64,000 nucleotides of DNA from the IMG/VR virus record IMGVR_UViG_3300030098_004828, positions 62,001 to 126,000 of that record; one strand, 5' to 3'. Of this stretch, positions 1 to 54,015 are shown piece by piece. The position numbers and the translations under genes are program-made. The first letter of the stretch is position 1; every line of letters begins with the position of its first letter. The notes under the pieces are model-generated. The model saw only the letters and a list, made by a program, of their open reading frames with translations, did not search any database and was not told the origin of the DNA.

Positions 1-2
1 CT

Positions 3-5312: not shown

Positions 5313-5314
5313 CT

Positions 5315-7942: not shown

Positions 7943-8006
7943 TTTAAACTTTAAAAGTGTAGAATGAAAAGAAGAAAAACTTATAAAATTTTAGTATCTT
8001 AGTATT

Positions 8007-11000: not shown

Positions 11001-11657
11001 CAATATGGAATGATGGTTATTACTATGGATCAAAAAGCTTTAAATGATCTTATGCATAAAGATGATGGAAGTTATGTAACAAAAGCAGGTGATGACGGAT
11101 TTGGAGATGCAGCGACTGATCATGGTACTATAACAATGTTTTTTGATAGAGATATGGATTTAGGAATATTTGATCAACAGAATCAACCAGTTAGTTGGAT
11201 AGAAAGAGAAGTTAAAAATAATGGATCTTTCACTAAAAGTATTGATGGAGCAGGAGAAATAGTATTTATGTTTGATCAAAATGGTAACTTAGTTATGGAT
11301 ACTAAAAATTATGTAATGGGTGATGATGGTAATATGTATGCTGATCCATCACTTATTACAACAATTAATGATCCAAGTCAAGCAGATGCAATTTATAAAG
11401 ATTTATTAAAAGCATTTCAAAATAATGGCGGAGCTAATACAAACATGCATCAGACTGTATTAGAACAATATAAAACAGATCTTCAGCTTTATAATATGAA
11501 AAATAAAACTAAAATAAAAGCACTTGATTATGATTATGTTAGTAATTATTCTACAAACAATACTCCAAGTGATGTTTATAAAAATAATGCAAGCTCTTCA
11601 AATAATCAAGGAGGAGGTTCATATAATATAAATCCGAATTTTAAAGCATGGCCTTAA
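8007..11657 (+). CDS. Putative virion ejection/cargo protein (1216 aa)
   Basis: Long ORF directly upstream of the RNAP-bearing gene, as in the crAss-like three-gene ejection cassette. No catalytic motif recognised. Confidence 0.55.
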   Translation: MASYIEGVQDYIPNLEVFTPDYQFLNNVLKTRQDRYDAGFEQVNQLYGQIVHAPLTNPHNIEKRQQYVDGLSEKIKQVSGLDLSLNQNITTARSLFKPFYEDKNMLFDMAWSQMYKDGMTQAKMYKESADEEVRKKYWDYGIRWMDIQKEKMVNSPLENIMSVPMPEYHEDPNLYARAVKSLSTFGPEGKGMVIQKPSTSPDDFWLYDQINGSLIYAEPVGERINDETGKKETIYHNPAMPYLARTLLNDPEVIDGYRIRAEVDAYDYGKAHAQQFGGDEKLARLNFMKTFIDDTTNTAIQQLAEFNTIHERDKNIALNWEAYQKQFGIVPGSQDEKLLKEFETKYFLNEQSMLSLRKDIQRIQQPTEEYNSMFNTMIYAYAMSMIDHDLTSATQFYGDATAKITRKHNPYKMEAIQAENRRNQAILESWLRTQEAIAKGEMANPGLLFPEANPMTGDASKHGYTYDDISEVLGEDFTVFDDGFNALQKSMKTDVYTPMMNDITKLYLGVDGIRNTLRGDGPIGTIEFVDSDGVTKNVTLNEAVPLLLEDPDALNEVYDKAMSYWNNEVYIDGVLTNTNVPQKKFYQELSNYLNESEADRLLAQNYINTGLNEWMQTVDATLTMMNTADGAYGDLNNSEFPPMVITELDKYLMKEQKIPWEIVNKEGGARDQHLAEHPNDVRKDQRTFLFKDEYEHIVLNSYNAVNNDNKHLKSVLETALNDYKIQNNLPAGWPGPTYEQVTIQPTNTYGVSGANTGGTELRIVDPGISSQEATKIMQQIMSQNPLFQGKEDYWRWEVPFTQGTTSQGQTQDVGAYSNYLNMGKSDQQIADSKKANIVYSGPTLDGDVAEYYDLMEKNVNNIMTDANARGEYGLPSYNLRAYLEGADPNLGVAGILSTPVQVNFDVKNMHPNSDGYKTWVDIMNAMNSDAGGNVIIKLGDWSGTFDPNDTEDDPLAVKLLQEYSNMVRKDAGNAKAGETRATGTVIYSEIGGGPGAAGQYGMMVITMDQKALNDLMHKDDGSYVTKAGDDGFGDAATDHGTITMFFDRDMDLGIFDQQNQPVSWIEREVKNNGSFTKSIDGAGEIVFMFDQNGNLVMDTKNYVMGDDGNMYADPSLITTINDPSQADAIYKDLLKAFQNNGGANTNMHQTVLEQYKTDLQLYNMKNKTKIKALDYDYVSNYSTNNTPSDVYKNNASSSNNQGGGSYNINPNFKAWP

Positions 11658-11673
11658 AATAAAACTAAAATAA

Positions 11674-14600
11674 ATGGCAGAAGAAACACAAATAATTCCA
11701 GAAGGTTCAGGAAAAACAGGTAATGTTTTTGAAGAAGGGTTAAATGTTAATAGCACTCCTAATGATGCTAATTTAGATTTAACATCATCTTCTGTTGTAG
11801 ATAATTTACCTTATGATAATACACCTTTACATACACCCGGATGGAAAAATATATCAGATGTTGTAGCTGAACAAGGTGAATATTTTGCAGGACCTCCTGG
11901 AATGAATATAGATCCTTCTATATGGGCAGATGTTGGTAGAATGGATAAGATGTTAGCTGAACATGGTCTTGGTAATAATAATAACTTTTATAATCCTCTT
12001 CCTGGACAATCTGCAGGATCATTTAATCCTTTTGCAGAAAGCTCAGGAATTCTTGATCCTAATACTCTTGAAGGAAGAAGAGCTAAATTAACTCAAGTAA
12101 TTAATAATGCTCAACAAAATACACCTGGAAGAAATCCCGCATATAGAGATCCTATTTATTATGGAGCTAAGGCTTTTAATTTAGATAGATATACTAGTCA
12201 TCCAGCTTTTGATAGATTAGGTTTTCATCCTTTTGCAGATAATGATGCTTACTATAATGCAAATTCTAGTAAATGGGAAAACTTTCAAAGAACTTGGGGA
12301 GCTTTTGGTAGTATGTTTCATGAAGCATTTACAAGCCCTTGGAGATCTATAGGAGACTTTTTAGAAGGTGATTGGAATAGGGCTGATTATATAGGAGCTT
12401 CAGCAATGGAAGATGCTATGAGAATAGGTAGATCTACAAAAGGTGGAGTAGGAGGATTTTTTAATGATTTATTTTTAAATTTTTCATATACTTTAGGTAT
12501 TATTTCAAATGTTGTTTTAGAAGAAATGGCTCTTGCTGGAATAACATATTTATCAGGAGGTACAGCTGCTCCTGCTGCTGGTGCTAGAACAGTTTATAAT
12601 GTTGGAAGAATAATGAGGACTGGTGATAAAATAAATGATGCAAGAAAAGCTTCTCAAAGAACATTAGAAGCTATGAAAAATTATAACAATGTTAATAATT
12701 TTTGGAAGTTTACAAGAGGTGTAGGTAGATGGACTATGCCACAAACAGCTCAATTCTATAGAAGATTGCGTACTGCAGGTAGTACTGTAGATAACATGAA
12801 CAATCTAGGGAAATTAAGATTGGGTGCTGGTGCTCTATATAGAGATCTTAGAATGGCAAATTTAGCTTGGTCAGAAGCTAAAATGGAAGCAGGTCTTGTT
12901 GAAATGCAATTGCGTAATAAAAAATATCAAGAATATAGAAGAGCTAATAATGGAGCTCATCCAGATGAAGAATGGTTAAACGCATTAAATGTAGATGCAT
13001 TAAATGCAGCACAAACTACAATATTTTGGAATGCTCCTTTTATTCATTTAACTAATCAATTTGTTTTTCCTGGCTTAGGACGTGGTTTTAGAGGTGTAGG
13101 TAGACAATTTGATGACTCATTAGATGCAGTACCAGATGCAATACAAAGAGAATTAAAGAAACAAAAACCAAGTGGTATGCCTGGAAAATTTTATGATGCA
13201 GGTAAAGGTGTTTCTAGAATTAAATCAGAAGGTCTTAAAGGAGGATTAACTAAAGGTGCAAATTATGCATTAAGATATTTTGGAGCTAATGTTGGTGAGG
13301 GTGCGCAAGAGCTATATCAAGAAGCTGTTGCTGTAGGTGTAGAACACTATTATGGAAGTCTTTTTGATATGAGATTATCTACAGGATTAGATCTTCAAAG
13401 AGCTGATATGGAATTGTCTGCACAACAAGGTAGTAAATTATTTTGGGATTCTTTTCAAGAAGGTGCAAACTCTCAAATGGGATGGAATGGTTTTAAAGTT
13501 TTTATGTCTGGATTTATGATGGGGGGATTAGCAAGAATGGTTCAAACTCCAGTTTTAGATTGGGCTCCCAATTATGTTAATAAAAAATGGAATCAAGCTA
13601 AGTATGATAAATACGAAAAGCAAAAAGAAAAATTTAAAGCAAATGCTTTAGAGTATTTAGAAAACGGTAGAAAAGATCCTTTACATGTATTTGATAAAAC
13701 AAAAATAAATGTATTAAATCAAAGAGAAGCAAATCAACAAATGTATGCTGCATCTTTTTCTGGACAAGCTATGGAACATTATGATGCAAAAGATTGGGCT
13801 AAATTTGAACACTTTGAAACATATGTATCTATGGGTAAAACTCATCATTTTATTGATATAATAGATGATTACTTAGCATTAGATAATAAATCTTTTAGAG
13901 AAGCTTTTCCAGTAGAAACATATCCTGATTCAGTTGCAAAAATTAGATCTAGATTAGAGCAAAACAAAAAGGAAATAAATGAAATGAAAAGGAAGTATGA
14001 GGAAAGAAAAGAATTATACTCCAATCCTTTTAGTGAAGACAGATTTGAAGAAGGAACTGTATTATATCAACAAGAAAAATTACGAAGACTATCCTATGAC
14101 CATGCTAGAAAATTAGCTATGTATGTAGATTCATCTTTTGAAAGAGCTGTAGAAAGAATAAACAATATGTATAAAGCTTTATCTAGTGGGGATCTTAAAG
14201 TTTTAAAAAATATACAAGCTAATGAATTAGATCCTTTAATGGGTAAAAGACAATTAGAAGCAGAATTAGAATTATTAAATGTTGAACTAACAGGAACACT
14301 TAGTCAAAAAGATATAAAATTTAAAACTAAAAAGAAAGAACTTCTTACAGAGTTTTCTAATATAATTCATAATCCTAAATATCAAACTCCAAAAACAAAA
14401 GTATTTAGTAAAACTCATATGCCTAAATTAAGAAAAGCTTTTACAGATTATCTTAATTTTTTAGCTAAAGCAAAAAATGAATTTGTTGAAAGTAAAAATA
14501 TTGACAAAGCTCTTAATGCAATAGTTGATACACAATGGTTAGAAAAAAGATCAGGAGATCTTCATGATGCTGCAAGAATTTTGATGAATCCTAAAAAACT

Positions 14601-17600: not shown

Positions 17601-20600
17601 GCTAACTGCAAATGCAAGTTCTATACAATATAGACATTCATTTCTTAAAACGTCTTCAGAAAAGAAAATAGAATCAGATGAAAGAGAGGCAATAAATGAA
17701 CCAGAAGCTAATAAGATAGGAACTACAGACAGTGTAACTACAATGTTTACCAATTATCTAAAAAACGGTAAAGCTTCAAATGAATTATTAGATTCTTTAT
17801 CAGATGCTTTAGTTGCAGCTCAACAAGACATGTCTGTTTATGCAGCACAAGCTCTTGATATAGTTAAGAAAGCAGGACTAACACACCATGATGTTAAAAA
17901 TGCTCTTGATTTTGTTTACTCTTTTAAATTTGATAGTGATTTTGTTAATCCTATTACACAAAAAGTAATAGGAACAAAACAAGATCTAATGGAATATGTT
18001 CATACAATAGCATTAGGAAAGAAAAAAGTTACTGAATATACTCAAGAAGAATTAGATAATATGGATTCTGTATTTGAAAGTATAGATAATTTACACGATG
18101 TTGTACAAGCTGTAAATAAACCTATACTTCAAAGAGCTAATCAACTTTTAAAAGATGACAACTATAAGGTAGAGCTTCAAGCTATGGTTGATAATAAACT
18201 TTACAAATCTATGCCGGGTGGAACTAGTACACAAAAAGCTAAACAGAAAGGTCCTGCTGTAAGTATAGTTAATAAAGAAAAACAATTTAATTTAAAAGCA
18301 TATCAAAAAGCTCAAGAAGAACTTGAACAGTTAAATAATGCTTTAGAAGATGCAGCTTTTGATGAGGCAGTAGTACGTCAAGAATATATTAATTTAAAAA
18401 CTAATAAAGCTAAAAATGACTTTATACAAACATTAGAAGATACAGGTGATTTTAGAATTTTAGAAAATAAAAATAAATGGAATAGAAGAAATGTACTTTT
18501 AGAATTAATGAATCAATATGAAGCTGATATTAAAGGTATAGATCCTAATTTAGCAGGAAAATTTTTACCAGAAGTATTAAAATCTATAGATGAACATGAT
18601 ATAGCTAGACGTCAAGAGTTTATTGAATTTATGAGAGAGAATCTTCCACAATTTATGGTGGATAGAATAGATAATTTAGAATGGAATTCTGAAAAAATGG
18701 GAGCTTTGATGGGAGCTTTTGTAATAGATTTAAAATCAGTTGGTCAAGGTTTAACATTAGATAATCTAGTTGGTAAAGTTTATTTGAGCAAAACTTCTAA
18801 ATTTGATTATCATGAGGCAGGTCATGCTACTATGAGAATGCTTATGACAGATGAAGAAATTGCTACATGGATGGCAACTGCTAGAAAAAATGTTAGAGCA
18901 CAAATGAGATCTAAAGAGGGTTACAAAATAGGTGAAAATGCTGATGGTAGTTCTATAATAGTTAAAAATGTAAAACAAGCTTTAGAGCATTTAAGATTAC
19001 AGTCCTATATGTATTCTCAAATGTCTGATAATCTATTAGAGAAAAGACTTTATGAAGAAGATATCTGGGATAATTTTCAATTATATAAAGAGAATCCTAA
19101 AAATAAAAAAGTAAGAAAAGAATATAAAGGATTCTTTAGCTGGTTAGTTGAAATGATTAAAAAAGTATTTAAGTTTTTTACAACTAGTTATTGGAATAGT
19201 ACAAGGTCAAGTGGATTGGGAGGTCCTTATGATTCTTTATTTGAAAAAATAGATAATGGAAAATATAGAACAAGAGCTATTCAAAAAAATCAATTTACAG
19301 AAGGATTTTTAGAAGGAGGTTTATCTTTTAAATATGCTTTAAAACCTATTCCTACAGGAAGACCTAAAGTATTAGCAACAAGTAAATTAATTGAAGGGCA
19401 AGAGCAAGAAGTTCTTAAACAAGTTACAGAGTATTTTCCGCCAGAAGAGGAAGCAAGATATGTAGCTAATATAGTTAAGATATATTTAGAGCTGTTAGAT
19501 AAGATGGAGGGTAAATACATACCCAATAAAGTTCTATTAGATGCTGTTAATATTGTTACAGAGAGTCTTAATCCTAAAAGACAAATATTCCAAGATATGG
19601 ATCCTGGTGATTATAGAAAAATAAAATCACAATTAAAAAAAGACTATGCAGCATTAAGTAGTCCAGAAGCAAAAAGAGCTTTAATGAAATCTGCAAGAGT
19701 TGCTTTAACTAGACATGATCAATTTCAAGATGCATTTGATGAAATGATAATGGATAAAGATCATGAATTAGAAGGAAGAACTAATGAAACAAGTTGGGAC
19801 GAACAGTTACAAGAAATAGGACCAGAAAAAACAGCTTCAAGATTTGTAAGAGATCTTATTGCCACAACAGTTCTTACTGATCAAGCAGGACAACCTTTAG
19901 GAGATAAAAAATATGGTTTTAAATGGTTAGATGATGCTAAAACAATACCTGCTGTTCAACCTGTAGATTATATGAAAGCTTTTAATGCACTTCTTTTAGC
20001 AGGAGAAGGTATTGAAAATCATTATGAAAGATTTAGAACTATATGGAATCAAACTCACTATAAGCCTGATCTTAAAGCAGTTATGGTAAATATACTTAAT
20101 TTATTGGGTGTAAAACCTGCCCAATTAAGAGGTAACAGTTGGATGCAAAATGTAGAAAAAAATGGGACTGCAAAACAACAATGGTATTTGGGTAGAATAA
20201 TTAAAGCTTTTGATACAGTAAGAGTTGATTATTATAATTTAATTCAAAGTGATTCAGGAAATACAAAAGGTTATGTCAATATAATTAATGCAGCTCATAA
20301 AGATGATGCATCTAATCAATTAAGAAGTGCAACTAATGTATATTTAGGTCTTGATTCAAAATGGCAAGGAGAAGGAAAAGAATCAAGAAAACTTCACAGG
20401 CGTGCAACAGGTGTTTTAAATGATTGGAATAATATATTGTCTGAAGGAAAACCTATGACTGATGCAAAATTAGCAAGAAAGTCTAAAGAAATAAGTACAA
20501 GACTAAGAGAAAGATTGGGTATTGAACTTCATCCTGCAACTATAGAAAATAGTATAATTAATTTTATAGAACTTAGTACTGAATATCAAAAACAATTATT

Positions 20601-23600
20601 CAAACAACAAAATAAATTACAAGATTCTAAACAATTTAAATGGCAAAAAGATGATGTCTTTTTCTCATTAGAAACTATTTCTACTTTAAGAGATGCTAAT
20701 GTTCCTCATCAATATCTTAGTTTATTAGCTCATAGTCAATATCTTGAGTTTGATGAAATGAGTGATAAAGAATTTAAATCTGTAATGAATGAAAGAGAAT
20801 CAGGTGCTTTAGGTAGATGGAGAAGAATTTTTAGAATTAATGCTTTATATGATCCTAATGTTGGTCATACTGTATTTAGAGATATGAAAGGTAATTGGAT
20901 ATATGCACATCAAATTCCTACATATACTATAAGAGCAATGCAGAAATGGAATGATTTAAATCATCTTGATAACTTAAAAGCAAAAAATTGGTTTAATAAA
21001 AATCATAGTTATTTTTTACAGTCTCCAGATTTTAGAGCGATGAGTAAAAAAGGTATGCATAGAACAACTAGACTTTTAGGAGGAAAGATGACTTCTATGA
21101 AAGTTAAAGATAATAAGTTAATAGAAATGAGAATGAAAGATGAAGCTCCTGCAAAAGGTGTTTCAACAGGTGAAATGTCTCCTGCTCAAATATATTCTTC
21201 ATTAGCTAATATGATGTTGAAATTCTATAATGCTGAAAATCAAGAAGTTACTACTGTAGTAGACGAAGATAGAAACGGTTATGAATTTGCCTTAATGACA
21301 AGTCTTTTAAGAACTAGATCAACATCTAATACATTTGATTTTGGAGATTTTCCTGTGTTAGATGCTGTAATTAAAAATAAATCAGGACAAAGTATTATAA
21401 ATCCTGAGTTTGTTGAAATGGTTATAAGATGGATGATTCAACCTCAATATGAAAGAATAAGATTAGAGAATGCAAGATTTAATAATGTTAATGAAGGTAT
21501 TCCATTAACAAAAGAAATAATAATAAACTATAATGATTTTGCAGATCCTACAAGTGATCTTACTTCTATATATCTTCAAACTGATTTATTAGATATTGTA
21601 AATATAGCAAGTGGTATAAAGAAAATAAAATTACCAAAATTTGTTACAGAAGCTGAAACAAAAGATATACTTAGTGGAAAGCAAACAGCATTCTTAAGAA
21701 CAGCTGAAGGACAAGGTAAGATAGGTTTATTTGGTGAAGGGAAAAGAGCTGTTGTAGAAAGTGAAGAGGGTACATTTGTTCTTACTTATCATGGTTTTAA
21801 AAACTCAGATGCTTTTGATGATATAAATGAAATAAAAGAAATGTTTGGTGCTAGAATTTTAGATAAGAAAACTCTTACTCATACTGAAGCTATAAAAGTT
21901 GGTAATGAGTTTTGGTGGACAGATATGAAAGTAATTAAAAATTTCTTTAGTCAGAATCAAGCTAAAAAAGAATCATACAAAAGACATTTATATACTATAA
22001 AACCTTTAGATGCATATACAGGAATGTCAGGAAGTTTGGCAGAAGAACTTTTACAAAGACAAGCTTTAGAGGTAAATAAATGGTTTGGAAGTCATAAAGA
22101 TGAAAATTTTGCAGAAAAAGTTGCAGAAGAAGATGTTGTAGTTGTATTTGGTGCAAATAGCCTAGGACTTCATGGAAGAGGAGGTGCTGGATTTGCAATG
22201 GGAAAACAAAGAAGTTTAAAACAAATAGAAGAAGTAGAAGATGGTACTGTAGGAGATTATGCAATTAAAGGTAAGACAGGTATTATGCAAGGATCTAAAG
22301 GTCTTGGATATGGATTAATTACTGTTTCTGGAAAGCCAAAAGGAAGATATGGTGGAGCAAGCATGACAACAATAGAAATAGTAAATGAAATAAAAAATTT
22401 ATATTCTTTAGCTGAAAATAATCCTGAAACAACATTTAAAGTTCTTTATGAATTAGAAGAAAATGAAAAGAGTTTAAATGGATATACAGGTCAAGAATTA
22501 GCAGATATGTTTGTATCGGCAGGTGCTATTCCAGAAAATATACAATTTAATGAAACGTTTGCTGACTTATTATATGTATCAAAAGATACAGGATCAAGAA
22601 GCAGATTAATGGCAGATGTTAATACTAAACTTACTGAAGATGCACAAACATTAGCACAAGATGGTGTGACATTCAAAAAATTTAGAGAAGAATTTCAAGG
22701 ACCTAATGGTGAATCATTAGTTGAAATTGTTACAAATAGATTACAGGCAGATTTTGATGCTTGGCATATTTCTTTAAGAGACACAGGTGCATTAGATTTA
22801 ATTAATCCTATGCTTAAAAAAGATGGATTAACAAGTAATTCAGGTAAGAAAAATAAGAAAACTAAATTAGCAAATAAATCTTTAGGTTTAATACCAGGTA
22901 ATGCTACACATAACTTAATGCAAATATTTCTTAATGATTATTTTAATACAAAAGCAGCAATGGCTTTATTATTTGGAGATGAAGCAAAAGTTTTAGGAGG
23001 TTCTCAAGATAAAACTAAAAGAGGCCCTGCTCTTAATTATGGAGGAGATAATGTATCTTCACAAGTTGCTTCTCCAGAAAATGGAATTCCTACTCCTGTT
23101 AATAAATTTAAAATTTGGGTTTATGATGATACTGTAGCACAAGATATGTTTATGGGAACTGAGATAAAAACAAATGACGCTTATGTTCTTGCAACTACTT
23201 TTGGACGTAGAGCTATAGCATGGGGATTAGGTATAGGGCAATTAGCAATGTATCCTATGATAGATGAGATTGAATCTAATCAAGAAGGTGGTATGTCTGC
23301 CACAAGATATTTAGGCAATAAAGAAACTGGAGAAGAAGGTTATAAAAAGTTTGGAGCAAATTTAGCATCATTAAAACTTGCTTATATGGATGGGAGCAGT
23401 ATGCTTAAAATGACTGTAGGATCTGCTACTCCTGAAATGATTAGTCATTATGATGGTACACCTATGGAATCATCCATACCATTGTGGAATATGATGGAAA
23501 AAATGAGACAATGGGAATCTAAAAATCCAGGTCAATTTGTATTAGCGGTTCCAAGATCTGCAGCTAAAATGTTAAAAGTAAATCCAGCAAATATTAATGA

Positions 23601-26600
23601 TGCATTTGGTGAACCTAATCAATTTCCTATAAGTGAACAAAGTTTAACTGAAGCAACTGCTGAAAATCTTTATCTACAAGTTGTAAATCCAACAAATAAA
23701 ATGGAAGGTCCTGATCCAAGACAAAAGAAAACAGGTATAACACAAGAACAAGATTTTGTTAATATACATGGAGAAGATATAGAAATTCCTGGATGGGAAG
23801 TTATTAAGGATGGTAAAAAACAACCTATTACAATTAAAGAAGTAAAAGAATTTTATAAGGATAATACCAAAGCACGTGTAACCTTACAGTTTACAGGAAG
23901 AAGAAATTTAATGTTTGACTTAGGAACAGGTAGAGATAAAAATATAATTGAAACAGATATTGATCCTATAAATATAACAGTAAATTGGCGTGCTTTCTTA
24001 GAGTATGCACGTACTTCATTGATGTCTGGTAAAACTCCAGAACAATTTTTAGAATTTTTTGAAACAACTATAAGAGGTCAAAATGCATATGAGTTAAATA
24101 ATCCTTTAACACTTCCTAAATTTGATGAATTGTTTAGAAGCTTCTTTGCTAAAGGAGTATTAGGTGAAAGAGTTCCTGGTCATGGTTTAACTCTTATAGG
24201 AAATGGTAGAAAAGTTGTAAAGCAAGTAGTTGCTCTTGATAAAAATGATCAACCTGTTCACGGTAAGTCTAGAGTTATTAGAGATAAACATTGGAAACTA
24301 CTATATAAAAAAGGAGAAAAAATAGCAGTAGCAGGTATGAATTATGCTAGAGAAAATAAAGTAATAGATGGTAAAAGTGTTTTTGTTGGTGAATTTGATG
24401 GGTTAAAGGTTGGTGATTATTATATAGATGTGTTAAGAACAGACGTTCCTCAGTATATAAAACATAACTCTAATGGTGAATTTATTTCAGATCATAATAA
24501 GTGGGAATTAAGTGGTGAAGTTAGAACAGAAATTATGGTTCCTTTTCATAATCCACATGCTGAAACCATACCTATAGATCAAGAAATTCCAGAGTCTCTT
24601 TCTACAATGTATATGACACGTATTCCTACAGATGATAAAAAATCTCAAGATGTAGGTAAAGTTGTTAATGAACTTCCTGTATATATGGGATCTGTAGTTA
24701 TGGCATCAAATGAGCATATATTTAGATCAGGTGCCGATATGGATAATGATAAAGATTATACTCAAATTTTTGATACATATGTAGATGACAAAGGTGTTAT
24801 ACAAATTTATGGAGATCAATTTCATAGTAAAAAAAGAAAGAGTATAGATAAAAAATATGAAGAATATATTAGAAAAGTTGTAAGTGAAGCAAAGAAAAAG
24901 AATTCTAATATGAGTTATGCTGTTAAAGTATTTAAAGAAAGACTTTCTCAATTTAAACAAGAATCAGGTGTAATATTAAAAACATCAGAAAAATTAGAAC
25001 AAGAATTTGTAGAATGGCTTTCTAATCTTGATAAAGATAGAAAAGTAAAAGGTAAAAGTTTATTTGCTCAACAGCTTTATAATGCAATGAAAAGATTAGA
25101 TGGGGATAATTTAGATATGCTATCAGCAAAACTTAGATTTGCGTCTATGAGAGGATATGAATATGATATAGTTACTGGTAAATTTATAGATTTATTTGAA
25201 GAAGACATACATATTGATAGTGACTCAAGATATAGTGTTATACAAAAGTTTTATAATAATAATAAAATCCTACAAGGTGCTATGACTTTATTGGGTTTAC
25301 CTTTAACAATGGAACAGTTTATTGAATTTGAACTTAATCATGGATCTCCTAATTTAGGAGCATTAAATAATAATATTTTACAAGCTTCTATAGCTCTTTT
25401 ACAACATGAAGGAATGCGTAAATCACAAGAAAATGGTTTACCAGGAATTAAAAATGAACCTACAACAACTAGTCCTTATGATACAGCTTGGAAATATTAT
25501 GAAGATAATTTGCCAGGTTTATTTAAAAGAAGAGATACATCTAATATTAATGTAGATAATATGGATGGAAAAAGTAAAGCTTTTATGACTAATAAAATTG
25601 CAGAAAAAAATGTTGGAGCTGTTGTAACTCCAAAACAAATATTAGATTTATTAGGAGAACATAATGTTGAATTATTTGTAGAAGATTGGCAAGGAAAACC
25701 TTTACCATATATATCTTTTCAAGGTCATACTTTTAATAAACTTAATACTCAGTATATTATAAGAAATGGTAAGGAAGATAAAATAGATGGTGTTAGAACT
25801 GGAACAAATCTAGCTGCAATGATAAATGCAATGACGGATAATGGAACTCATATGCATGCAGGTAAATTTAATATAACTGCTAATCAAGCAGCATTACAAA
25901 CTTTACAAGCTAAGTTAGGAATGGATATGACTACAATACTTACACTTAGTGATAATCCTATACTTGAAAAATATATTATAATGGGAGCTTTCAAACAACC
26001 TGGTGAACCAGGAACAAGAAAATTAGTGGAAGGTCATATGAGTAATTTAGTTAAGAAGTATGGACAAGATATGTTAGATATAGTTGCTGTAACTGTATTA
26101 GATCAGGAAATAATTAATTCACATATTAATAGTCATCCGGATAATAATCCTGCTGAATATGGTTTTGAAATTATTGATCCTTCTAAAAGCTATGGAGAAC
26201 TATTTAAAAAAGATCCTCAATTAGCTTTAACAAGAGCTGCAGAAGAATATTTAATTCTTCAACTTTGGTTAAATACAAATAGAGTTTCAGACAGTGTATC
26301 TAGAACTCAAAAACCATTAAGACTTCTTAAAGGTCCAGGTAGAAATAGTGAAGAAACTTCTTTTATAATGGAAAATATAAAAGAAATGGGTCTAGATCTA
26401 GATACTTCTAAAAAAGGAAATGATAAGTTTAATAAATTAATAGATCCTATAGATAATATGGCATTACCTTTTGATGCTAGAAAAGCTTTTAGAGATTCTA
26501 TTATGAAAACATATTTAGATATATTCTTTCAAATGGAAAAAAGTTTAGCACCTGCTCTTTTAATAACAGAAACTCCATTCTTTAAAAAAGCTACTGATAT

Positions 26601-29049
26601 AATATTAACTCAACTTAAAAATAAAGCAAAGACGAATGAAAGAAAACATAAGATTAAAAAAGATATATTAAGCTATCTTACAGCACGTGCAGTTAGACAA
26701 CATTATTTAAATAATGGAATGATAAAAGAAGCTCAAGATATGACTAATGGAACATTATATGAAACTTTAAAAATATCTGAAACTCAATTAACAGCATCAG
26801 AAGCTTTAGCAAAACTTAGTGAGTATTATAATGGACAAGAAGAATATAACTTTTTTGCTCAAGGTTTTTTAAGTAGTATTGGTGAAAGATCTCCTATGAA
26901 TGCTTCAGGTATGAGTAAAGTCACATCTAATACTTGGACAAAATTAGAAGATAAGACAGTTAGACATATAAGATCTGCATTTATGAAAGCTTATGATAAT
27001 CCAGTTACACATGATTGGATAATGACTTTGTTACATTATGAACTTGTTAAGAATGGGCTTCAATATACTGCTGATACTTTTATTACTGCAATTCCACCAC
27101 AAGCTTTAGAAGAAGTAATTTCAACAATTACTCCTGTACATAATTTCTTTAAACAACTTCAGTTGTCTGATACAAGAGCAGAAAATTTATTAGGAATGAC
27201 TGTACACCAACTATTACAAGATATGACTCTTGGTTATTTAGGAGCAGAAAAAAACAATAGTATACTTAAAGAGTTGTATGGAAAACCTGTAACAGATTTA
27301 GGATCTCCAGATATGGTTGATGTATATGATGATCAAATAACAGAAGAAATGGCAGATGCAAATCCTAATATATTATTTGTATATGAAGATGTACTTAGAG
27401 GTGGAAAACCTTTAAATGCAAGAATAAGATCTAAAGAAAATGTAATGGGTCTTAGAATGAGAAAGCATTATAAAAAAGATGAAAAAAGTCCTTTCTTAGA
27501 TGCTAATGAACAAACATTAATGAAAGATAATTTTGATAAAGATTTAGCTGCTATTAGAGAATTAATGAATGAAACAAAAGAAGATGGATCACCTCTCTAT
27601 GAAAGTATAGTATTCCCAAGTTTTTATTTAATGGGAGATGTGTATTTAGAAAAACAAGAAGTTCAAGAAGAAACAGAAGAAAAAGAAAAGAAGAAAAAAG
27701 AAAAAGCTCCATATAAAGGTAAGTCAGAGAAGGTTTATAAACATATGCGTGAACAAATAAAAAAACAATTTGGTTTTAATATACAATCAGGTAGAGTTGC
27801 TGCCTCTGAAAGTATTAAAGCTAAACGAGCTAAACAATTAAAAGAAGCTGCAATAGCAAAATATCCTAATGAAGGTCTTCTTGTTTTAAGTATGAAAAGT
27901 GGATTAATTCCTGCACAAGATATTAGATCATTAAAAAGAAAAGCAAAAGGAAAAGGTAATAAGAAAGAGGAAAAGAAATTTAAAGCAATGTTGGGTGAAG
28001 CTGTTAAAAAGAATAAAGAACAATGGAAAACTAATTTAACAACATTAAGAGAGGGTGGTGTTAGGATAATAGAAATAGAAGATCCGAATGATGCAAATGC
28101 AACAATCTTAGTTATGGAAGCTCCTCTTTATTATAGAGAATTGGAATATACCTATACAAAAGATGCTAACACAGGTAAGAAGGTTAGAAATCTTTCAGGT
28201 ATTACAACTTATAGATTATTGCAATTTAATGATCCTACAAGACAAGAAGAAGAAATAGAAAACTTTTTTGAATTTGATGCTAGATTAGAAAAGAAAGGTA
28301 TAACAACTCCAAATATTGTCTATGCTACAGAAGCAATATATGAAGCTGTTAAAACTACATTTTCAAATTTACAAAACCCAATGGTAGGAAACGCTTTATT
28401 ATTACCTACTCAAGAGCCTATATACTATGAAACAATAAGAGAAAGACAAGAAGAAATTAAAGAAAGATATGATAGTTTGTTTAATAAAAAGAAAGGTTTT
28501 ATGGGTATTGATATATCAGCACAAGTAGCTAATTTACTTGCAAGTAGAATGGCAGCTATAACTGGAGGAAAAAAACCAGATATTAATAAAGTTCTTACAT
28601 CATCATTACCTCAATCAGCTTTTAAAAATGAAGTAAAAGATGTTCAATACACACAAGAAATAAAAGCTACAAATGAATCTGTAGAAGTAGGTGGTAAAGA
28701 AATTACAAGTCAAACTCCTGCAGAAAAATTATTAATGATGATGGCAAAAGGAGCTATAAAACAACAAGAAATTAAAAAACAATTGCCAAGCTCTACTAAA
28801 AAAAGTGTTACTAAAAAAATTGATCAATCAACTCCTGAAACAAGTAAATATGAAGGAAGATTAAGAGGTATTTGGAAGAGTTTAAGTCAAGATAAAAAAG
28901 AAGCAATTGCTAATGTTTTTGGAGAAGGAGATATAGCAATGACTGAAGTTAGTGAGCAAGAGTTTGTAAATTATTATTTTAGATATAAAAAGTATAACCC
29001 AACCTTTACGTTAAAGGAATTCATTAAAAAAATCAATGAGTGTTACTAG
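11674..29049 (+). CDS. Giant virion-associated RNA polymerase polyprotein (5791 aa)
   Basis: YMTRIPT (about 24610-24630) followed about 35 aa later by GADMDNDK (24730-24753), matching the R.P...DxDxD two-barrel RNAP catalytic loop (DFDID in crAss-like virion RNAPs). Also HEAGH zincin motif, two macro-like segments and N-terminal hydrophobic stretches. Confidence 0.85.
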   Translation: MAEETQIIPEGSGKTGNVFEEGLNVNSTPNDANLDLTSSSVVDNLPYDNTPLHTPGWKNISDVVAEQGEYFAGPPGMNIDPSIWADVGRMDKMLAEHGLGNNNNFYNPLPGQSAGSFNPFAESSGILDPNTLEGRRAKLTQVINNAQQNTPGRNPAYRDPIYYGAKAFNLDRYTSHPAFDRLGFHPFADNDAYYNANSSKWENFQRTWGAFGSMFHEAFTSPWRSIGDFLEGDWNRADYIGASAMEDAMRIGRSTKGGVGGFFNDLFLNFSYTLGIISNVVLEEMALAGITYLSGGTAAPAAGARTVYNVGRIMRTGDKINDARKASQRTLEAMKNYNNVNNFWKFTRGVGRWTMPQTAQFYRRLRTAGSTVDNMNNLGKLRLGAGALYRDLRMANLAWSEAKMEAGLVEMQLRNKKYQEYRRANNGAHPDEEWLNALNVDALNAAQTTIFWNAPFIHLTNQFVFPGLGRGFRGVGRQFDDSLDAVPDAIQRELKKQKPSGMPGKFYDAGKGVSRIKSEGLKGGLTKGANYALRYFGANVGEGAQELYQEAVAVGVEHYYGSLFDMRLSTGLDLQRADMELSAQQGSKLFWDSFQEGANSQMGWNGFKVFMSGFMMGGLARMVQTPVLDWAPNYVNKKWNQAKYDKYEKQKEKFKANALEYLENGRKDPLHVFDKTKINVLNQREANQQMYAASFSGQAMEHYDAKDWAKFEHFETYVSMGKTHHFIDIIDDYLALDNKSFREAFPVETYPDSVAKIRSRLEQNKKEINEMKRKYEERKELYSNPFSEDRFEEGTVLYQQEKLRRLSYDHARKLAMYVDSSFERAVERINNMYKALSSGDLKVLKNIQANELDPLMGKRQLEAELELLNVELTGTLSQKDIKFKTKKKELLTEFSNIIHNPKYQTPKTKVFSKTHMPKLRKAFTDYLNFLAKAKNEFVESKNIDKALNAIVDTQWLEKRSGDLHDAARILMNPKKLEQVADRINFSMRRVWNTMRDKNHQIKEIDKYIRETERMAVLQKLSEEDIYPHPIQTMIYLEQGIKPTLFYNKKGIIDQLNQPEEHKKILSIFNLSDDTSEDGKDAKKENAEEIEKQAKESKEKDEVEKEETDLTVGGTGEVPDEKKKEKEEEVEYEVPKNTDSDSTIVDLVPKNNDKPPASLGKVLSSVNNDTKIQNVLNNKYEQWAANQALEDPNRSIMTQELWEQDETLGGAIKSARKELFKLYAKKVSLKDRQSTPFDTWLKSNAANLEVDDIIEKYPLATSSVQDIMIGDVTAVQPMPEEKLNPSLESIVSDGKKDKTGIWILKSSIELDPDADPKELYTVTDNNKIDLSEKFFHLDPASLDPDGYDTLDEAQRAKDKILKWLGKPEDRDFVFDGIQFRRGMSIVKGEDLNDWKNAEQEDKGNYEWTVMANKKTVENNNNVWIQKKVGNTIEKGDKPIVLEEGDWAADGWVIEFDAKELSQKEKQKTKTKLQKTEPLQFFAITESKGETTYTKIKRHEKLLKSMTPEKQKNLVLRIMRMEDFEEKMKIPVKKLTPLEFETKQPNKRIRKGYVKHRVFLEYDGYDIAELQGIHSSVILDENNKELNPMTMSNKQILETFVMGEHDKARGVTEQEFADTVRNNYKQGYLIMKKIDEYMGENLATEIPFYIEGKKNPVLEDIGITIQAGNIAYSTSVANRSTFDQLEYKSADSKINKDGSKGSQVIYSLYKDKNGDWREAPFDNFDQATTENEDYRDSQLELIENDRKMVDLDIKSLGRYVMVIRDDRGVYTYAALQPREKTSVELEEMFTQLKERHIETLKENYVSVEGTNKRMIKKGKKYTDQGFGMQYNNEFNSNFSETHFIASKTKGDVIVLGVDPYGNINLEYFNRITKHETRVSLNEEEVATASNFLELLNLLNEKWKKTEWAKAYKKVEGTKKAVKDVNRPNFKIQPIDFRISLPRTITTEQLSDVKILIQPEIRKNIRTVLSYTKQSEIDMLTANASSIQYRHSFLKTSSEKKIESDEREAINEPEANKIGTTDSVTTMFTNYLKNGKASNELLDSLSDALVAAQQDMSVYAAQALDIVKKAGLTHHDVKNALDFVYSFKFDSDFVNPITQKVIGTKQDLMEYVHTIALGKKKVTEYTQEELDNMDSVFESIDNLHDVVQAVNKPILQRANQLLKDDNYKVELQAMVDNKLYKSMPGGTSTQKAKQKGPAVSIVNKEKQFNLKAYQKAQEELEQLNNALEDAAFDEAVVRQEYINLKTNKAKNDFIQTLEDTGDFRILENKNKWNRRNVLLELMNQYEADIKGIDPNLAGKFLPEVLKSIDEHDIARRQEFIEFMRENLPQFMVDRIDNLEWNSEKMGALMGAFVIDLKSVGQGLTLDNLVGKVYLSKTSKFDYHEAGHATMRMLMTDEEIATWMATARKNVRAQMRSKEGYKIGENADGSSIIVKNVKQALEHLRLQSYMYSQMSDNLLEKRLYEEDIWDNFQLYKENPKNKKVRKEYKGFFSWLVEMIKKVFKFFTTSYWNSTRSSGLGGPYDSLFEKIDNGKYRTRAIQKNQFTEGFLEGGLSFKYALKPIPTGRPKVLATSKLIEGQEQEVLKQVTEYFPPEEEARYVANIVKIYLELLDKMEGKYIPNKVLLDAVNIVTESLNPKRQIFQDMDPGDYRKIKSQLKKDYAALSSPEAKRALMKSARVALTRHDQFQDAFDEMIMDKDHELEGRTNETSWDEQLQEIGPEKTASRFVRDLIATTVLTDQAGQPLGDKKYGFKWLDDAKTIPAVQPVDYMKAFNALLLAGEGIENHYERFRTIWNQTHYKPDLKAVMVNILNLLGVKPAQLRGNSWMQNVEKNGTAKQQWYLGRIIKAFDTVRVDYYNLIQSDSGNTKGYVNIINAAHKDDASNQLRSATNVYLGLDSKWQGEGKESRKLHRRATGVLNDWNNILSEGKPMTDAKLARKSKEISTRLRERLGIELHPATIENSIINFIELSTEYQKQLFKQQNKLQDSKQFKWQKDDVFFSLETISTLRDANVPHQYLSLLAHSQYLEFDEMSDKEFKSVMNERESGALGRWRRIFRINALYDPNVGHTVFRDMKGNWIYAHQIPTYTIRAMQKWNDLNHLDNLKAKNWFNKNHSYFLQSPDFRAMSKKGMHRTTRLLGGKMTSMKVKDNKLIEMRMKDEAPAKGVSTGEMSPAQIYSSLANMMLKFYNAENQEVTTVVDEDRNGYEFALMTSLLRTRSTSNTFDFGDFPVLDAVIKNKSGQSIINPEFVEMVIRWMIQPQYERIRLENARFNNVNEGIPLTKEIIINYNDFADPTSDLTSIYLQTDLLDIVNIASGIKKIKLPKFVTEAETKDILSGKQTAFLRTAEGQGKIGLFGEGKRAVVESEEGTFVLTYHGFKNSDAFDDINEIKEMFGARILDKKTLTHTEAIKVGNEFWWTDMKVIKNFFSQNQAKKESYKRHLYTIKPLDAYTGMSGSLAEELLQRQALEVNKWFGSHKDENFAEKVAEEDVVVVFGANSLGLHGRGGAGFAMGKQRSLKQIEEVEDGTVGDYAIKGKTGIMQGSKGLGYGLITVSGKPKGRYGGASMTTIEIVNEIKNLYSLAENNPETTFKVLYELEENEKSLNGYTGQELADMFVSAGAIPENIQFNETFADLLYVSKDTGSRSRLMADVNTKLTEDAQTLAQDGVTFKKFREEFQGPNGESLVEIVTNRLQADFDAWHISLRDTGALDLINPMLKKDGLTSNSGKKNKKTKLANKSLGLIPGNATHNLMQIFLNDYFNTKAAMALLFGDEAKVLGGSQDKTKRGPALNYGGDNVSSQVASPENGIPTPVNKFKIWVYDDTVAQDMFMGTEIKTNDAYVLATTFGRRAIAWGLGIGQLAMYPMIDEIESNQEGGMSATRYLGNKETGEEGYKKFGANLASLKLAYMDGSSMLKMTVGSATPEMISHYDGTPMESSIPLWNMMEKMRQWESKNPGQFVLAVPRSAAKMLKVNPANINDAFGEPNQFPISEQSLTEATAENLYLQVVNPTNKMEGPDPRQKKTGITQEQDFVNIHGEDIEIPGWEVIKDGKKQPITIKEVKEFYKDNTKARVTLQFTGRRNLMFDLGTGRDKNIIETDIDPINITVNWRAFLEYARTSLMSGKTPEQFLEFFETTIRGQNAYELNNPLTLPKFDELFRSFFAKGVLGERVPGHGLTLIGNGRKVVKQVVALDKNDQPVHGKSRVIRDKHWKLLYKKGEKIAVAGMNYARENKVIDGKSVFVGEFDGLKVGDYYIDVLRTDVPQYIKHNSNGEFISDHNKWELSGEVRTEIMVPFHNPHAETIPIDQEIPESLSTMYMTRIPTDDKKSQDVGKVVNELPVYMGSVVMASNEHIFRSGADMDNDKDYTQIFDTYVDDKGVIQIYGDQFHSKKRKSIDKKYEEYIRKVVSEAKKKNSNMSYAVKVFKERLSQFKQESGVILKTSEKLEQEFVEWLSNLDKDRKVKGKSLFAQQLYNAMKRLDGDNLDMLSAKLRFASMRGYEYDIVTGKFIDLFEEDIHIDSDSRYSVIQKFYNNNKILQGAMTLLGLPLTMEQFIEFELNHGSPNLGALNNNILQASIALLQHEGMRKSQENGLPGIKNEPTTTSPYDTAWKYYEDNLPGLFKRRDTSNINVDNMDGKSKAFMTNKIAEKNVGAVVTPKQILDLLGEHNVELFVEDWQGKPLPYISFQGHTFNKLNTQYIIRNGKEDKIDGVRTGTNLAAMINAMTDNGTHMHAGKFNITANQAALQTLQAKLGMDMTTILTLSDNPILEKYIIMGAFKQPGEPGTRKLVEGHMSNLVKKYGQDMLDIVAVTVLDQEIINSHINSHPDNNPAEYGFEIIDPSKSYGELFKKDPQLALTRAAEEYLILQLWLNTNRVSDSVSRTQKPLRLLKGPGRNSEETSFIMENIKEMGLDLDTSKKGNDKFNKLIDPIDNMALPFDARKAFRDSIMKTYLDIFFQMEKSLAPALLITETPFFKKATDIILTQLKNKAKTNERKHKIKKDILSYLTARAVRQHYLNNGMIKEAQDMTNGTLYETLKISETQLTASEALAKLSEYYNGQEEYNFFAQGFLSSIGERSPMNASGMSKVTSNTWTKLEDKTVRHIRSAFMKAYDNPVTHDWIMTLLHYELVKNGLQYTADTFITAIPPQALEEVISTITPVHNFFKQLQLSDTRAENLLGMTVHQLLQDMTLGYLGAEKNNSILKELYGKPVTDLGSPDMVDVYDDQITEEMADANPNILFVYEDVLRGGKPLNARIRSKENVMGLRMRKHYKKDEKSPFLDANEQTLMKDNFDKDLAAIRELMNETKEDGSPLYESIVFPSFYLMGDVYLEKQEVQEETEEKEKKKKEKAPYKGKSEKVYKHMREQIKKQFGFNIQSGRVAASESIKAKRAKQLKEAAIAKYPNEGLLVLSMKSGLIPAQDIRSLKRKAKGKGNKKEEKKFKAMLGEAVKKNKEQWKTNLTTLREGGVRIIEIEDPNDANATILVMEAPLYYRELEYTYTKDANTGKKVRNLSGITTYRLLQFNDPTRQEEEIENFFEFDARLEKKGITTPNIVYATEAIYEAVKTTFSNLQNPMVGNALLLPTQEPIYYETIRERQEEIKERYDSLFNKKKGFMGIDISAQVANLLASRMAAITGGKKPDINKVLTSSLPQSAFKNEVKDVQYTQEIKATNESVEVGGKEITSQTPAEKLLMMMAKGAIKQQEIKKQLPSSTKKSVTKKIDQSTPETSKYEGRLRGIWKSLSQDKKEAIANVFGEGDIAMTEVSEQEFVNYYFRYKKYNPTFTLKEFIKKINECY
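24610..24753 (+). other. RNA polymerase catalytic motif region (RIP...GADMDND)
   Basis: Asp triad D4355/D4357/D4359 with the conserved upstream Arg-x-Pro. Confidence 0.85.
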
Positions 29050-37021: not shown

Positions 37022-37142
37022 AAGGACAATGCTTACAACCATTCCCGCAGCAATATCCTCTTTTAAGATGATATGCTGCAGTCATGACTGTATTACCGTC
37101 TCTATCTTTATAGAAATATGGAGTAAATTTACTTAACTTCAC
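36981..37142 (-). CDS. Small Cys-rich DUF5522-like protein (53 aa), not in ORF track
   Basis: GTG start overlapping the last RNR codons. Translation MKLSKFTPYFYKDRDGNTVMTAAYHLKRGYCCGNGCKHCPF...; HLKRGYCCGNGCKHCP matches the DUF5522 signature as I recall it. Confidence 0.75.
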   Translation of the reverse strand: MKLSKFTPYFYKDRDGNTVMTAAYHLKRGYCCGNGCKHCPFKQKERPDQHQQT

Positions 37143-42073: not shown

Positions 42074-42077
42074 TAAT

Positions 42078-53998: not shown

Positions 53999-54015
53999 AT
54001 TATTAAATTTTATGT

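What the first reader, a model, noticed from the sequence alone, without database searches (positions are those of the whole stretch)
11674..29049. 5791-aa virion RNA polymerase polyprotein with a DMDND active-site variant
Seen: a single 17.4-kb ORF with the catalytic loop GADMDND at aa about 4353-4359. Established: the characterised crAss-like virion RNAP (phi14:2 gp66) is about 2200 aa with DFDID. This protein is more than 2.5 times as long, and both aliphatic/aromatic loop positions differ (F to M, I to N). Most of the remaining sequence is unassigned and may hide further domains.
Basis: partly seen in the sequence, partly recalled or inferred. Interest (0 to 1): 0.68.

Follow-up and report, generated by a model that had tools for sequence, protein, structure and literature searches.

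The report
Giant crAss-like virion RNA polymerase fusion
The 17.4-kb gene is a real, intact member of the known family of giant injected RNA polymerases of crAss-like phages; its length is normal for its marine clade, and only its catalytic loop (DMDND instead of DFDID) is unusual.

Summary
Window 11674-29049 (+) is one open 5791-codon frame, and GADMDND sits at aa 4353-4359.

A family profile that includes this protein hits phi14:2 gp66 (PDB 6VR4) at E 1e-39. AlphaFold models of aa 3720-4900 and 2260-3300 align to gp66 825-1762 (Z 18.0) and 99-707 (Z 10.9), then to QDE-1/RDR2 (Z about 13).

The novelty claims mostly do not hold:
- **Length.** Of the 156 best relatives, 110 have 3400 aa or more (median 4427, maximum 6249). 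Nearly all carry the same upstream HExxH module. Fused polyproteins are already described in the literature.
- **Loop.** The combination is unique among 157 sequences. But positions 2 and 4 vary in about 14% of family members, with at least 10 independent origins, and the Asp triad is intact.

The variant is real. Contigs from four independent marine studies carry identical codons, and pN/pS in the core is about 0.2. The lineage has the longest branch in the family tree and has also changed H4323K, D4332N and K4725T near the active centre.

Context: the 245.6-kb "genome" is a two-lap assembly chimera of two sibling phages of about 121-125 kb. The sibling's 5461-aa ortholog has canonical DFDID.

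Verdict: a new, divergent member of a known kind, of modest interest.

The parts
11674..29049 (+). Giant ORF, 5791 aa (P0001): injected-protein/RNA polymerase fusion
   Evidence: Colinear over aa ~100-5400 with metagenomic giants of 4.6-6.2 kaa at 23-33% identity.
11851..14973 (+). N-terminal conserved region (aa ~60-1100), function unknown
   Evidence: Shared with 51 of 156 relatives, all giants. No Pfam/PHROG/NCBIfam hit. No phage-database tblastn hit. Atlas gives only weak 'LPD' polyvalent-protein leads.
18676..19503 (+). HExxH module (aa 2335-2610; HEAGH at aa 2380-2384 = nt 18811-18825), putative zincin-like metalloprotease
   Evidence: H, E, H and a downstream EE pair are invariant in 61 sequences. 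YHE[AS]xH occurs in 101 of 110 giants. Only marginal matches to a Pro-Pro endopeptidase (E 0.087) and a metal hydrolase (Z 4.4).
19426..21447 (+). gp66 N-terminal-like part (aa 2585-3258)
   Evidence: AlphaFold model (pLDDT 72.6). Foldseek 6VR4 E 4e-11. VIA-align Z 10.9, 498 aa aligned to gp66 99-707, next hit Z 5.8.
22120..22572 (+). A1S_2505 / phrog_2072-like small domain (aa 3483-3633) inside a lineage-specific insertion (aa ~3290-3720)
   Evidence: phrog_2072 E 2.4e-10. NF049995 34 bits, below the cut-off of 45. tblastn hits to other crAss 'putative RNA polymerase' genes and Vibrio phages. Present in only 6 of 156 relatives.
22831..26373 (+). Two-barrel RNA polymerase core (aa 3720-4900)
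   Evidence: Profile vs 6VR4 E 1.2e-39. Model pLDDT 82.9, pTM 0.84. 6VR4 Foldseek E 2e-21. VIA Z 18.0 over 784 aa to gp66 825-1762; QDE-1 Z 13.5-13.9; RDR2 ~13; Rpb1/beta' ~6.
24619..24645 (+). RIPTDDKKS (aa 4316-4324), counterpart of family RIPSQDKHS
   Evidence: R, P, D and S are kept in 119-125 of 126 relatives and in this protein. H4323K departs (H in 112/126).
24730..24750 (+). Catalytic loop GADMDND (aa 4353-4359)
   Evidence: Aligned with SGADFDID of relatives and TGSDFDID of gp66. Asp triad kept; F->M and I->N. Codons identical in four independent studies.
25834..25848 (+). TDNGT (aa 4721-4725), counterpart of family TDNAK, which aligns to gp66 residues within its published trigger-loop range
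   Evidence: T, D, N kept; K4725T (K in 122/126). Alignment to gp66 ~1603-1654. Trigger loop 1598-1636 as published.
27325..27576 (+). DUF7831-like small domain (aa 5218-5301)
   Evidence: PF25176 E 1e-5, 25.8 bits against a cut-off of 27. Atlas feature search links A1S_2505-like and DUF7831 clusters. BLASTP between the two copies finds nothing.
29070..36851 (+). Next gene, 2593 aa, gp65-like injected protein with an inserted CCA-adding-type nucleotidyltransferase (aa ~225-666 = nt 29742-31067)
   Evidence: PolyA_pol E 7e-19, HD 1.5e-6, phrog_2244 8.5e-65. C-terminus matches phi14:2 gp65 975-1360, E 1e-7. aa ~91-728 are absent from the sibling's ortholog.

Best explanation
The ORF encodes a virion-packaged, host-injected protein of a marine crAss-like (Crassvirales-related) phage that probably infects Bacteroidota. 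Its modules are: a ~2280-aa N-terminal part of unknown function; a conserved HExxH (zincin-like) module; a complete homologue of phi14:2 gp66, made of the gp66 N-part and the two-barrel DNA-dependent RNA polymerase core and interrupted by a ~430-aa insertion with an A1S_2505-like domain; and a C-terminal extension with a DUF7831-like domain. By analogy with gp66 it is ejected with the DNA and transcribes the early genes, possibly after cleavage into pieces. The DMDND loop is a lineage-specific variant of DFDID. It keeps the three metal-binding aspartates, so the polymerase is most likely still active. Shown here: the open frame, homology, fold, motif alignment, population conservation and family-wide size distribution. 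Inferred: packaging, ejection, processing and activity.
For: ORF and motif. Family: 2364 cluster representatives at E<=1e-3, 538 at E<=1e-30. Giants are the norm, and 101 of 110 carry the HExxH motif. Homology to gp66: profile E 1.2e-39. Fold: Z 18.0 for the core and Z 10.9 for the N-part. Crassvirales context: crAss_MUZ (PF25731) ORF upstream in the same genome; TerL ~26% identical to crAss-like phages of Bacteroides, Flavobacterium and Cellulophaga; a relative's neighbours carry crAss_MUZ and crAss_CARG1; gene order RNAP then gp65-like, as in phi14:2. Activity: Asp triad, R-x-P, D4321, K4360 and T-D-N retained. pN/pS 0.21 from 16 synonymous and 13 non-synonymous variants in the core. No beta'-type RNAP domain elsewhere in the record. 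Literature: gp66 is a virion RNAP that needs all three Asp, and fused polyproteins are known.
Against: P0001 has the longest terminal branch of 127 cores (1.22 against a median of 0.31). It keeps only 88 of 120 columns that are >=80% conserved, the sixth most deviant. It has changed near-invariant residues around the active centre: H4323K, D4332N, F4356M and K4725T. No biochemical or proteomic data exist for this phage. The HExxH module could not be tied to a defined peptidase family. No detectable homology of the first 2280 aa to phi14:2 gp67/gp65 or to gut crAss proteins.
Confidence: 0.75

Rival explanations
1. The polymerase core is catalytically dead or decaying. The protein would be kept only as a structural or ejection component, or as a carrier of its other domains.
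For: Longest branch in the family tree. 32 of 120 conserved columns changed, including H4323K, D4332N, F4356M, I4358N and K4725T. There is a precedent in the family: P0143 (6198 aa) has lost the whole Asp triad (GFKNN) yet keeps the giant frame.
Against: All three Asp, R4316/P4318, D4321, K4360 and T-D-N are kept. pN/pS is ~0.2 in the core. Other members with canonical DFDID also lack the trigger-loop Lys (P0002). No other RNAP was detected in the genome.
Confidence: 0.17
2. The 245.6-kb record is a genuine jumbo phage that carries two diverged copies of everything. These would include two virion RNAPs (one DFDID, one DMDND) that divide labour.
For: One IMG/VR contig, CheckV 100%. Both giant ORFs are intact.
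Against: C1:223-124,690 is colinear gene for gene with C1:125,004-245,646, with replication and structural genes at 80-95% aa identity. The longest exact repeat between the halves (111 nt) lies exactly at the contig start and the A/B junction, and a 79-nt repeat lies at both ends. That is the signature of a two-lap assembly path through two related circular or permuted genomes.
Confidence: 0.06
3. DMDND is a sequencing or assembly error in a canonical DFDID gene.
For: None beyond the rarity of the motif.
Against: F->M needs two base changes. Contigs from four independent studies (2014-2025) are identical over window 24633-24834.
Confidence: 0.01

Closest known systems
Cellulophaga phage phi14:2 gp66, virion-packaged DNA-dependent RNA polymerase (PDB 6VR4)
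   Same: Profile homology E 1e-39. Predicted fold matches gp66 99-707 and 825-1762. Same catalytic-loop position, R-x-P motif and trigger-loop TDN motif. Same gene order with a gp65-like protein downstream. Marine Bacteroidota-phage context.
   Different: gp66 is a separate 2180-aa protein with DFDID. Here the homologue is fused behind ~2500 aa (unknown region plus HExxH module). It also carries a ~430-aa insertion and a ~600-aa C-terminal extension, and it reads DMDND. In phi14:2 the HExxH lies in the downstream gp65 (aa 245), not upstream.
Metagenomic marine giants of the same clade (e.g. P0002 5069 aa, P0010 5722 aa, P0012 5045 aa, P0003 6249 aa) and the sibling ORF at G000 C1:194566-210942 (5461 aa)
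   Same: Same colinear architecture: N region, YHEAxH module, gp66-like part and core.
   Different: All have DFD[IVL]D. Identity to P0001 is only 23-33%. Most lack the A1S_2505-like and DUF7831-like domains.
Gut crAss-like giant 'transcription block' proteins (e.g. cr110_1 4417 aa, cr107_1 4213 aa; Yutin 2021; fused polyproteins noted by Drobysheva 2020)
   Same: Giant multidomain proteins containing the DxDxD barrel. BLASTP E 4e-9 around the loop. A zincin-bearing partner protein.
   Different: There the peptidase is a separate upstream gene, the RNAP loop lies near aa 1500, and the gp65-like C-part is fused behind it. Here the fusion points differ.
QDE-1 / RDR2 eukaryotic RNAi polymerases and other single-chain two-barrel phage RNAPs (P23-45 gp96, P32 gp64, P74 gp62)
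   Same: Two double-psi barrels in one chain. Z 13-14 (QDE-1, RDR2) and 8-10 (phage enzymes).
   Different: No sequence-level membership. Their loop is DbDGD with Gly at position 4. They have different accessory domains and different biology.

Membership tests
crAss-like virion RNA polymerase (gp66 family) | Sequence-profile homology to gp66 | tested here: met
   Profile A3 (66 sequences, P0001 first) vs PDB: 6VR4 E 1.2e-39, covering gp66 856-1053 and 1321-1789. P0001 alone vs PDB finds nothing. BLASTP gives gp66 1322-1371, E 6e-4.
crAss-like virion RNA polymerase (gp66 family) | Two double-psi beta-barrels, connector, bridge helix and trigger loop in a single chain | tested here: met
   Model pLDDT 82.9. 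VIA Z 18.0, 784 aa, rmsd 4.0 to gp66 825-1762, a range that includes the published barrels, bridge helix and trigger loop. This is predicted, not solved.
crAss-like virion RNA polymerase (gp66 family) | DFDxD catalytic loop | tested here: inconclusive
   The D-x-D-x-D aspartates are present (D4355, D4357, D4359). The conserved Phe is Met (F in 112 of 126 relatives) and position 4 is Asn (I/V/L in 118 of 126).
crAss-like virion RNA polymerase (gp66 family) | gp66-type N-terminal region | tested here: met
   Foldseek E 4e-11; VIA Z 10.9, model 326-999 to gp66 99-707.
crAss-like virion RNA polymerase (gp66 family) | Crassvirales genome context (structural block, muzzle, giant-protein block) | tested here: met
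   PF25731 crAss_MUZ ORFs in the record. TerL hits 143 records, mostly crAss-like. gp65-like gene downstream.
crAss-like virion RNA polymerase (gp66 family) | Packaged in the virion, ejected into the host, transcribes early genes; Mg- and Asp-dependent RNA synthesis | not testable with these tools
   No isolate. No RNA run holds the sequence.
Zincin-like metallopeptidase | HExxH plus a third ligand on a zincin fold | tested here: inconclusive
   HExxH and a downstream EE pair are invariant in 61 sequences. There is no Pfam peptidase hit among the 61 members. PDB profile hit to Pro-Pro endopeptidase only at E 0.087. Model pLDDT in this part is 69-91 with only a Z 4.4 hit.
Eukaryotic RNAi RdRP (QDE-1/RDR) | DbDGD loop and family-level sequence homology | tested here: not met
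   Fold similarity only (Z 13-14, 12-14% identity). Position 4 is Asn, not Gly.
N4-type (T7-like, single-subunit right-hand) virion RNAP | T7-like polymerase fold or PF00940 | tested here: not met
   The fold is two-barrel, and no T7-like chain appears among the top matches. PF00940 gave no match, but its control rang nowhere, so that search alone is uninformative.
A1S_2505 family (NF049995) / phrog_2072 | Score over the curated cut-off | tested here: inconclusive
   NF049995 34 bits against a cut-off of 45. phrog_2072 E 2.4e-10. Atlas look-alikes score 0.92.
DUF7831 (PF25176) | Score over the gathering cut-off | tested here: inconclusive
   25.8 bits against a cut-off of 27, E 1e-5 on the isolated segment.

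The most novel reading that the evidence does not exclude
The giant-protein block acts as a fast-swapping delivery chassis. In two sibling phages that are 80-95% identical elsewhere, the ~49-kb block has been replaced or has hyper-diverged to ~25-35% identity. The window's version has picked up extra enzymatic cargo for injection with the DNA: two A1S_2505/DUF7831-type domains in the RNAP protein, and a CCA-adding nucleotidyltransferase in the gp65-like protein. Its polymerase has a remodelled active centre (DMDND, H4323K, D4332N, a His-rich trigger loop in place of the conserved Lys) with altered catalytic or auto-inhibition properties.
Probability: 0.2. Interest if true: 0.6.

Novelty: new member of a known kind. 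Interest (0 to 1): 0.33.

Why it matters
The result corrects the expectation set by the one characterised enzyme, the 2180-aa gp66. In marine crAss-like phages the virion RNA polymerase normally sits inside proteins of 4000-6000 aa with a conserved HExxH module upstream.

This lineage also offers a natural experiment on the catalytic loop. The phage with Met and Asn at the two non-aspartate positions has a sibling, otherwise 80-95% identical, that keeps DFDID. Swapping these residues could show what the Phe and Ile of DFDID contribute to catalysis or to the auto-inhibited loop conformation seen in gp66.

The finding itself is not a new kind of system.

Tried and rejected
- **Whole-protein family scans.** Pfam, PHROGs and NCBIfam gave only phrog_2072, a sub-threshold NF049995 and a sub-threshold DUF7831.
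- **Single-sequence PDB search.** phmmer of aa 3400-5000 found no RNAP.
- **N-terminal 2900 aa.** tblastn against 50,697 phage records found nothing.
- **Atlas search of aa 60-1080.** Only weak 'LPD' leads came back, below the recognition threshold.
- **Profiles against characterised crAss proteins.** jackhmmer profiles of aa 1-1100, 1100-2290, 2260-2600 and 4880-5460 found nothing in phi14:2 gp65/66/67 or in the cr110_1/cr107_1 proteins. Equating the N-terminal part with gp67, or the HExxH module with the gp65 or gut-crAss zincin, therefore stays unproven.
- **The two small domains.** BLASTP of the A1S_2505-like domain against the DUF7831-like domain found nothing.
- **HExxH module.** Pfam scans of 61 members found no peptidase family.
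- **Other polymerases in the record.** PF00623 gave none. PF00940 gave none, but its control was silent, so that search is uninformative. PF25725 crAss_CARG1 gave none.
- **tRNA genes in the window.** None.
Full report
**1. Observation**

The window holds one open frame at 11674-29049 (+) of 5791 codons with an ATG start. Its translation has no stop. GADMDND is at aa 4353-4359, encoded at window 24730-24750.

The region is 41% A and 29% T, so a stop is expected about every 11 codons. The chance of 5791 open codons is about 5e-247, and no other frame across the region exceeds 130 codons.

**2. What the protein is**

*Family scans and first relatives.* Curated family libraries are almost blank. 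They give phrog_2072 at aa 3483-3633, a sub-threshold NF049995 'A1S_2505' hit on the same stretch, and a sub-threshold DUF7831 hit at aa 5218-5301.

tblastn against phage genomes finds only weak hits around the loop, in giant genes of gut crAss-like phages. In cr110_1 the 4417-aa protein aligns its GSDFDVD with the window's GADMDND at E 4e-9.

A word search restricted to aa 4100-4700 returned six metagenomic giants of 3452-6249 aa. All six carry YHEA[FG]H far upstream and SGADFDID at the loop. P0002 is colinear with the query over aa 103-5413 at about 28% identity.

*Exhaustive profile search.* A profile search with the core alignment found 2364 cluster representatives at E<=1e-3 and 538 at E<=1e-30.

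*Homology to gp66.* A 66-sequence profile headed by the query hits phi14:2 gp66 (6VR4) at E 1.2e-39. The loop, the upstream R-I-P motif and the downstream T-D-N-A-K motif are all in register.

*Predicted fold of the core.* AlphaFold2 on aa 3720-4900 gave pLDDT 82.9 and pTM 0.84, with 87-94 around the loop.
- Foldseek ranks 6VR4 first at E 2e-21.
- VIA-align gives Z 18.0 over 784 residues to gp66 825-1762.
- QDE-1 follows at Z 13.5-13.9, RDR2 at about 13, phage P32 gp64 and P74 gp62 at about 9.5, P23-45 gp96 at about 8, and Rpb1/beta' active-site barrels at about 6.

That criterion is not met, so the polymerase assignment stands.

*Predicted fold upstream of the core.* A second model of aa 2260-3300 (pLDDT 72.6) also hits only 6VR4: Foldseek E 4e-11, and Z 10.9 for aa 2585-3258 against gp66 99-707, with the next hit at Z 5.8.

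**3. Architecture, and why the protein is long**

| aa | module | evidence |
|---|---|---|
| ~60-1100 | N region, function unknown | shared with 51 relatives, all giants |
| 1100-2280 | poorly conserved, partly K/E-rich | |
| 2335-2610 | HExxH module; H, E, H and a later EE pair invariant in 61 sequences | |
| 2585-3258 | gp66 N-part | |
| ~3290-3720 | insertion with the A1S_2505/phrog_2072-like domain | present in only 6 relatives |
| 3720-4900 | two-barrel core | |
| 4900-5200 | conserved C-part | shared with 127 relatives |
| 5218-5301 | DUF7831-like domain | |
| to 5791 | unique tail | |

- **Size in the family.** Among the 156 best relatives, 110 have 3400 aa or more. The median is 4427, the largest are 6249 and 6198, and 101 of the 110 giants carry YHE[AS]xH. 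So the length is normal for this clade.
- **Literature.** The gp66 paper already notes that in some crAss-like phages the RNAP and its neighbours are fused into one huge polyprotein, probably cleaved. Yutin et al. describe the block of large multidomain proteins.
- **Fusion points differ between lineages.** In phi14:2 the order is g067, g066 (RNAP), g065, and the HExxH lies in gp65 at aa 245. In gut cr110_1 and cr107_1 the peptidase is the upstream gene. Here the HExxH module is fused upstream of the RNAP. The next gene (window 29070-36851) is the gp65-like one: its C-terminus matches gp65 975-1360 at E 1e-7.
- **Limits on the HExxH assignment.** I could not tie the module to a defined peptidase family. 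There is a marginal profile hit to a Pro-Pro endopeptidase (E 0.087) and no Pfam peptidase among 61 members. I could not show homology of the first 2280 aa to anything characterised.

**4. The DMDND loop**

*How unusual it is.* Across 156 aligned loops the counts are DFDID 113, DFDVD 21, DFDLD 4, DNDID 4 and singles that include DMDGD, DFDND, DHDGD and DKDGD. One protein has no Asp triad at all (P0143, GFKNN). DMDND is unique as a combination, but Met at position 2 and Asn at position 4 each occur elsewhere.

On a maximum-likelihood tree of 127 cores, non-canonical loops need at least 10 independent changes. P0001 is unrelated to the DMDGD and DFDND lineages.

*How divergent the lineage is.* P0001 is sister to a 46-member, mostly canonical clade (SH-aLRT 99). 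It has the longest terminal branch, 1.22 against a median of 0.31. It keeps 88 of 120 columns that are at least 80% conserved, the sixth lowest of 127.

*Active-centre residues.*
- Kept: R4316, P4318, D4321, S4324, D4355, D4357, D4359, K4360 and T4721-D-N.
- Changed: H4323K, D4332N, F4356M, I4358N and K4725T. The last lies in the stretch that aligns with gp66's published trigger-loop range.

*The variant is real and under selection.* The 3.5-kb core occurs in marine metagenomes of at least seven studies. Contigs from four independent studies cover window 24633-24834 without any difference in the loop. The 29 variants seen across 3.5 kb are 16 synonymous and 13 non-synonymous, giving a crude pooled pN/pS of 0.21.

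With the triad intact and no beta'-type RNAP domain elsewhere in the record, an active polymerase is the more likely reading (about 0.75). A decaying catalytic centre remains a real rival (about 0.17). P0143 shows that such loss happens in this family.

**5. Genomic context**

*The record is a chimera of two genomes.* It is an IMG/VR contig of 245,646 bp, but it is not one genome.
- C1:223-124,690 is colinear with C1:125,004-245,646.
- Nearly every ORF has a syntenic partner. Replication and structural proteins are 80-95% identical.
- There are two crAss_MUZ ORFs and a second giant RNAP ORF at C1:194566-210942. It has 5461 aa, HEAFH at 2319 and canonical SGSDFDIDT at 4133.
- The longest exact repeat between the halves (111 nt) lies at C1:7-117 = 124,788-124,898, which is the contig start and the junction. 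A 79-nt repeat sits at both ends.

This is what a two-lap assembly path through two related circular or permuted genomes looks like. The window's phage is therefore about 125 kb, not a 245-kb jumbo.

*The giant-protein block is the divergent part.* Nucleotide similarity between the siblings vanishes from about C1:49.4 kb to 98.85 kb. The block's proteins are only 29-38% identical over partial alignments. The two RNAP giants are 23-29% identical, no closer to each other than to database relatives. Either the block was exchanged or it evolves extremely fast. The literature already remarks on the extreme divergence of crAss RNAPs.

*Affiliation and host.* TerL is about 26% identical to Crassvirales terminases from phages of Bacteroides, Flavobacterium and Cellulophaga. 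A window ORF carries a T9SS sorting domain. Both point to a Bacteroidota host.

**6. Verdict**

The two novelty arguments weaken on inspection:
- The size is the family norm, and fusion is already described.
- The loop variant is rare but within a recurrently varying pair of positions.

This is a new and unusually divergent member of a known kind, of modest interest. What is worth keeping is the natural DFDID/DMDND sibling pair, the accessory domains riding in the injected proteins, and the chimeric state of the public record.

No alternative genetic code was used.

Noticed in passing
whole record G000 (window = C1:62001-126000); junction at C1:~124,690-124,900: The 245,646-bp IMG/VR record (CheckV 100%) is a head-to-tail join of two related ~125-kb and ~121-kb phage genomes. 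The longest exact shared repeat (111 nt) sits at the contig start and at the junction. It is probably an assembly chimera, not a jumbo phage.
   Followed up: yes
G000 C1:49,400-98,850 (window up to ~36,850) versus C1:183,500-217,000: Between the two sibling genomes, the whole block of giant injected proteins (muzzle C-part to gp65-like) is ~25-38% identical in protein. Flanking genes are 80-95% identical. This is either a module swap or extreme divergence. Block sizes also differ: ~49 kb against ~33 kb.
   Followed up: partly
window 29070-36851 (+), domain at ~29742-31067: The 2593-aa gp65-like protein carries a CCA-adding / poly(A)-polymerase-type nucleotidyltransferase with an HD domain (PolyA_pol E 7e-19, phrog_2244 E 8.5e-65) and a weak LysM. 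The ~640-aa segment that holds the enzyme is absent from the sibling's ortholog. An RNA-repair enzyme may therefore be delivered with the DNA.
   Followed up: partly
protein P0143 (6198 aa, metagenomic relative), loop region: A relative keeps the giant frame and the core but has GFKNN in place of the Asp triad. It is an apparently inactivated polymerase within the family.
   Followed up: no
window 22120-22572 and 27325-27576: Two small domains of the A1S_2505 / DUF7831 type sit inside the RNAP protein. These normally occur as stand-alone ~130-150-aa phage proteins of unknown function. An Atlas feature search links the two families, but BLASTP does not.
   Followed up: partly
window 42051-45092 (+): A 1013-aa ORF (TTG start as listed) ends in a type IX secretion C-terminal sorting domain (Por_Secre_tail, E 2e-10). 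This points to a Bacteroidota host and to a phage protein routed through the host T9SS.
   Followed up: no
window 50246-51112 (-), 51109-52005 (-), 37129-38988 (-), 52094-54040 (-), 62506-63486 (-): The replication and repair module holds a spore-photoproduct-lyase-like radical SAM protein, DUF932, a ribonucleotide reductase, a family A DNA polymerase and a DnaG-type primase.
   Followed up: no
window 1-11657 (+): Three further large ORFs lie upstream (>=1743, 875 and 1216 aa) with no family hit at all. The first has two HExxH motifs, at aa 499 and 1031 of the ORF that starts at nt 81.
   Followed up: no
locus L003 28942-30090: The contig of relative P0007 carries an IS605 OrfB/TnpB-type (Cas12f-like) gene just downstream of its giant-protein block.
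   Followed up: no
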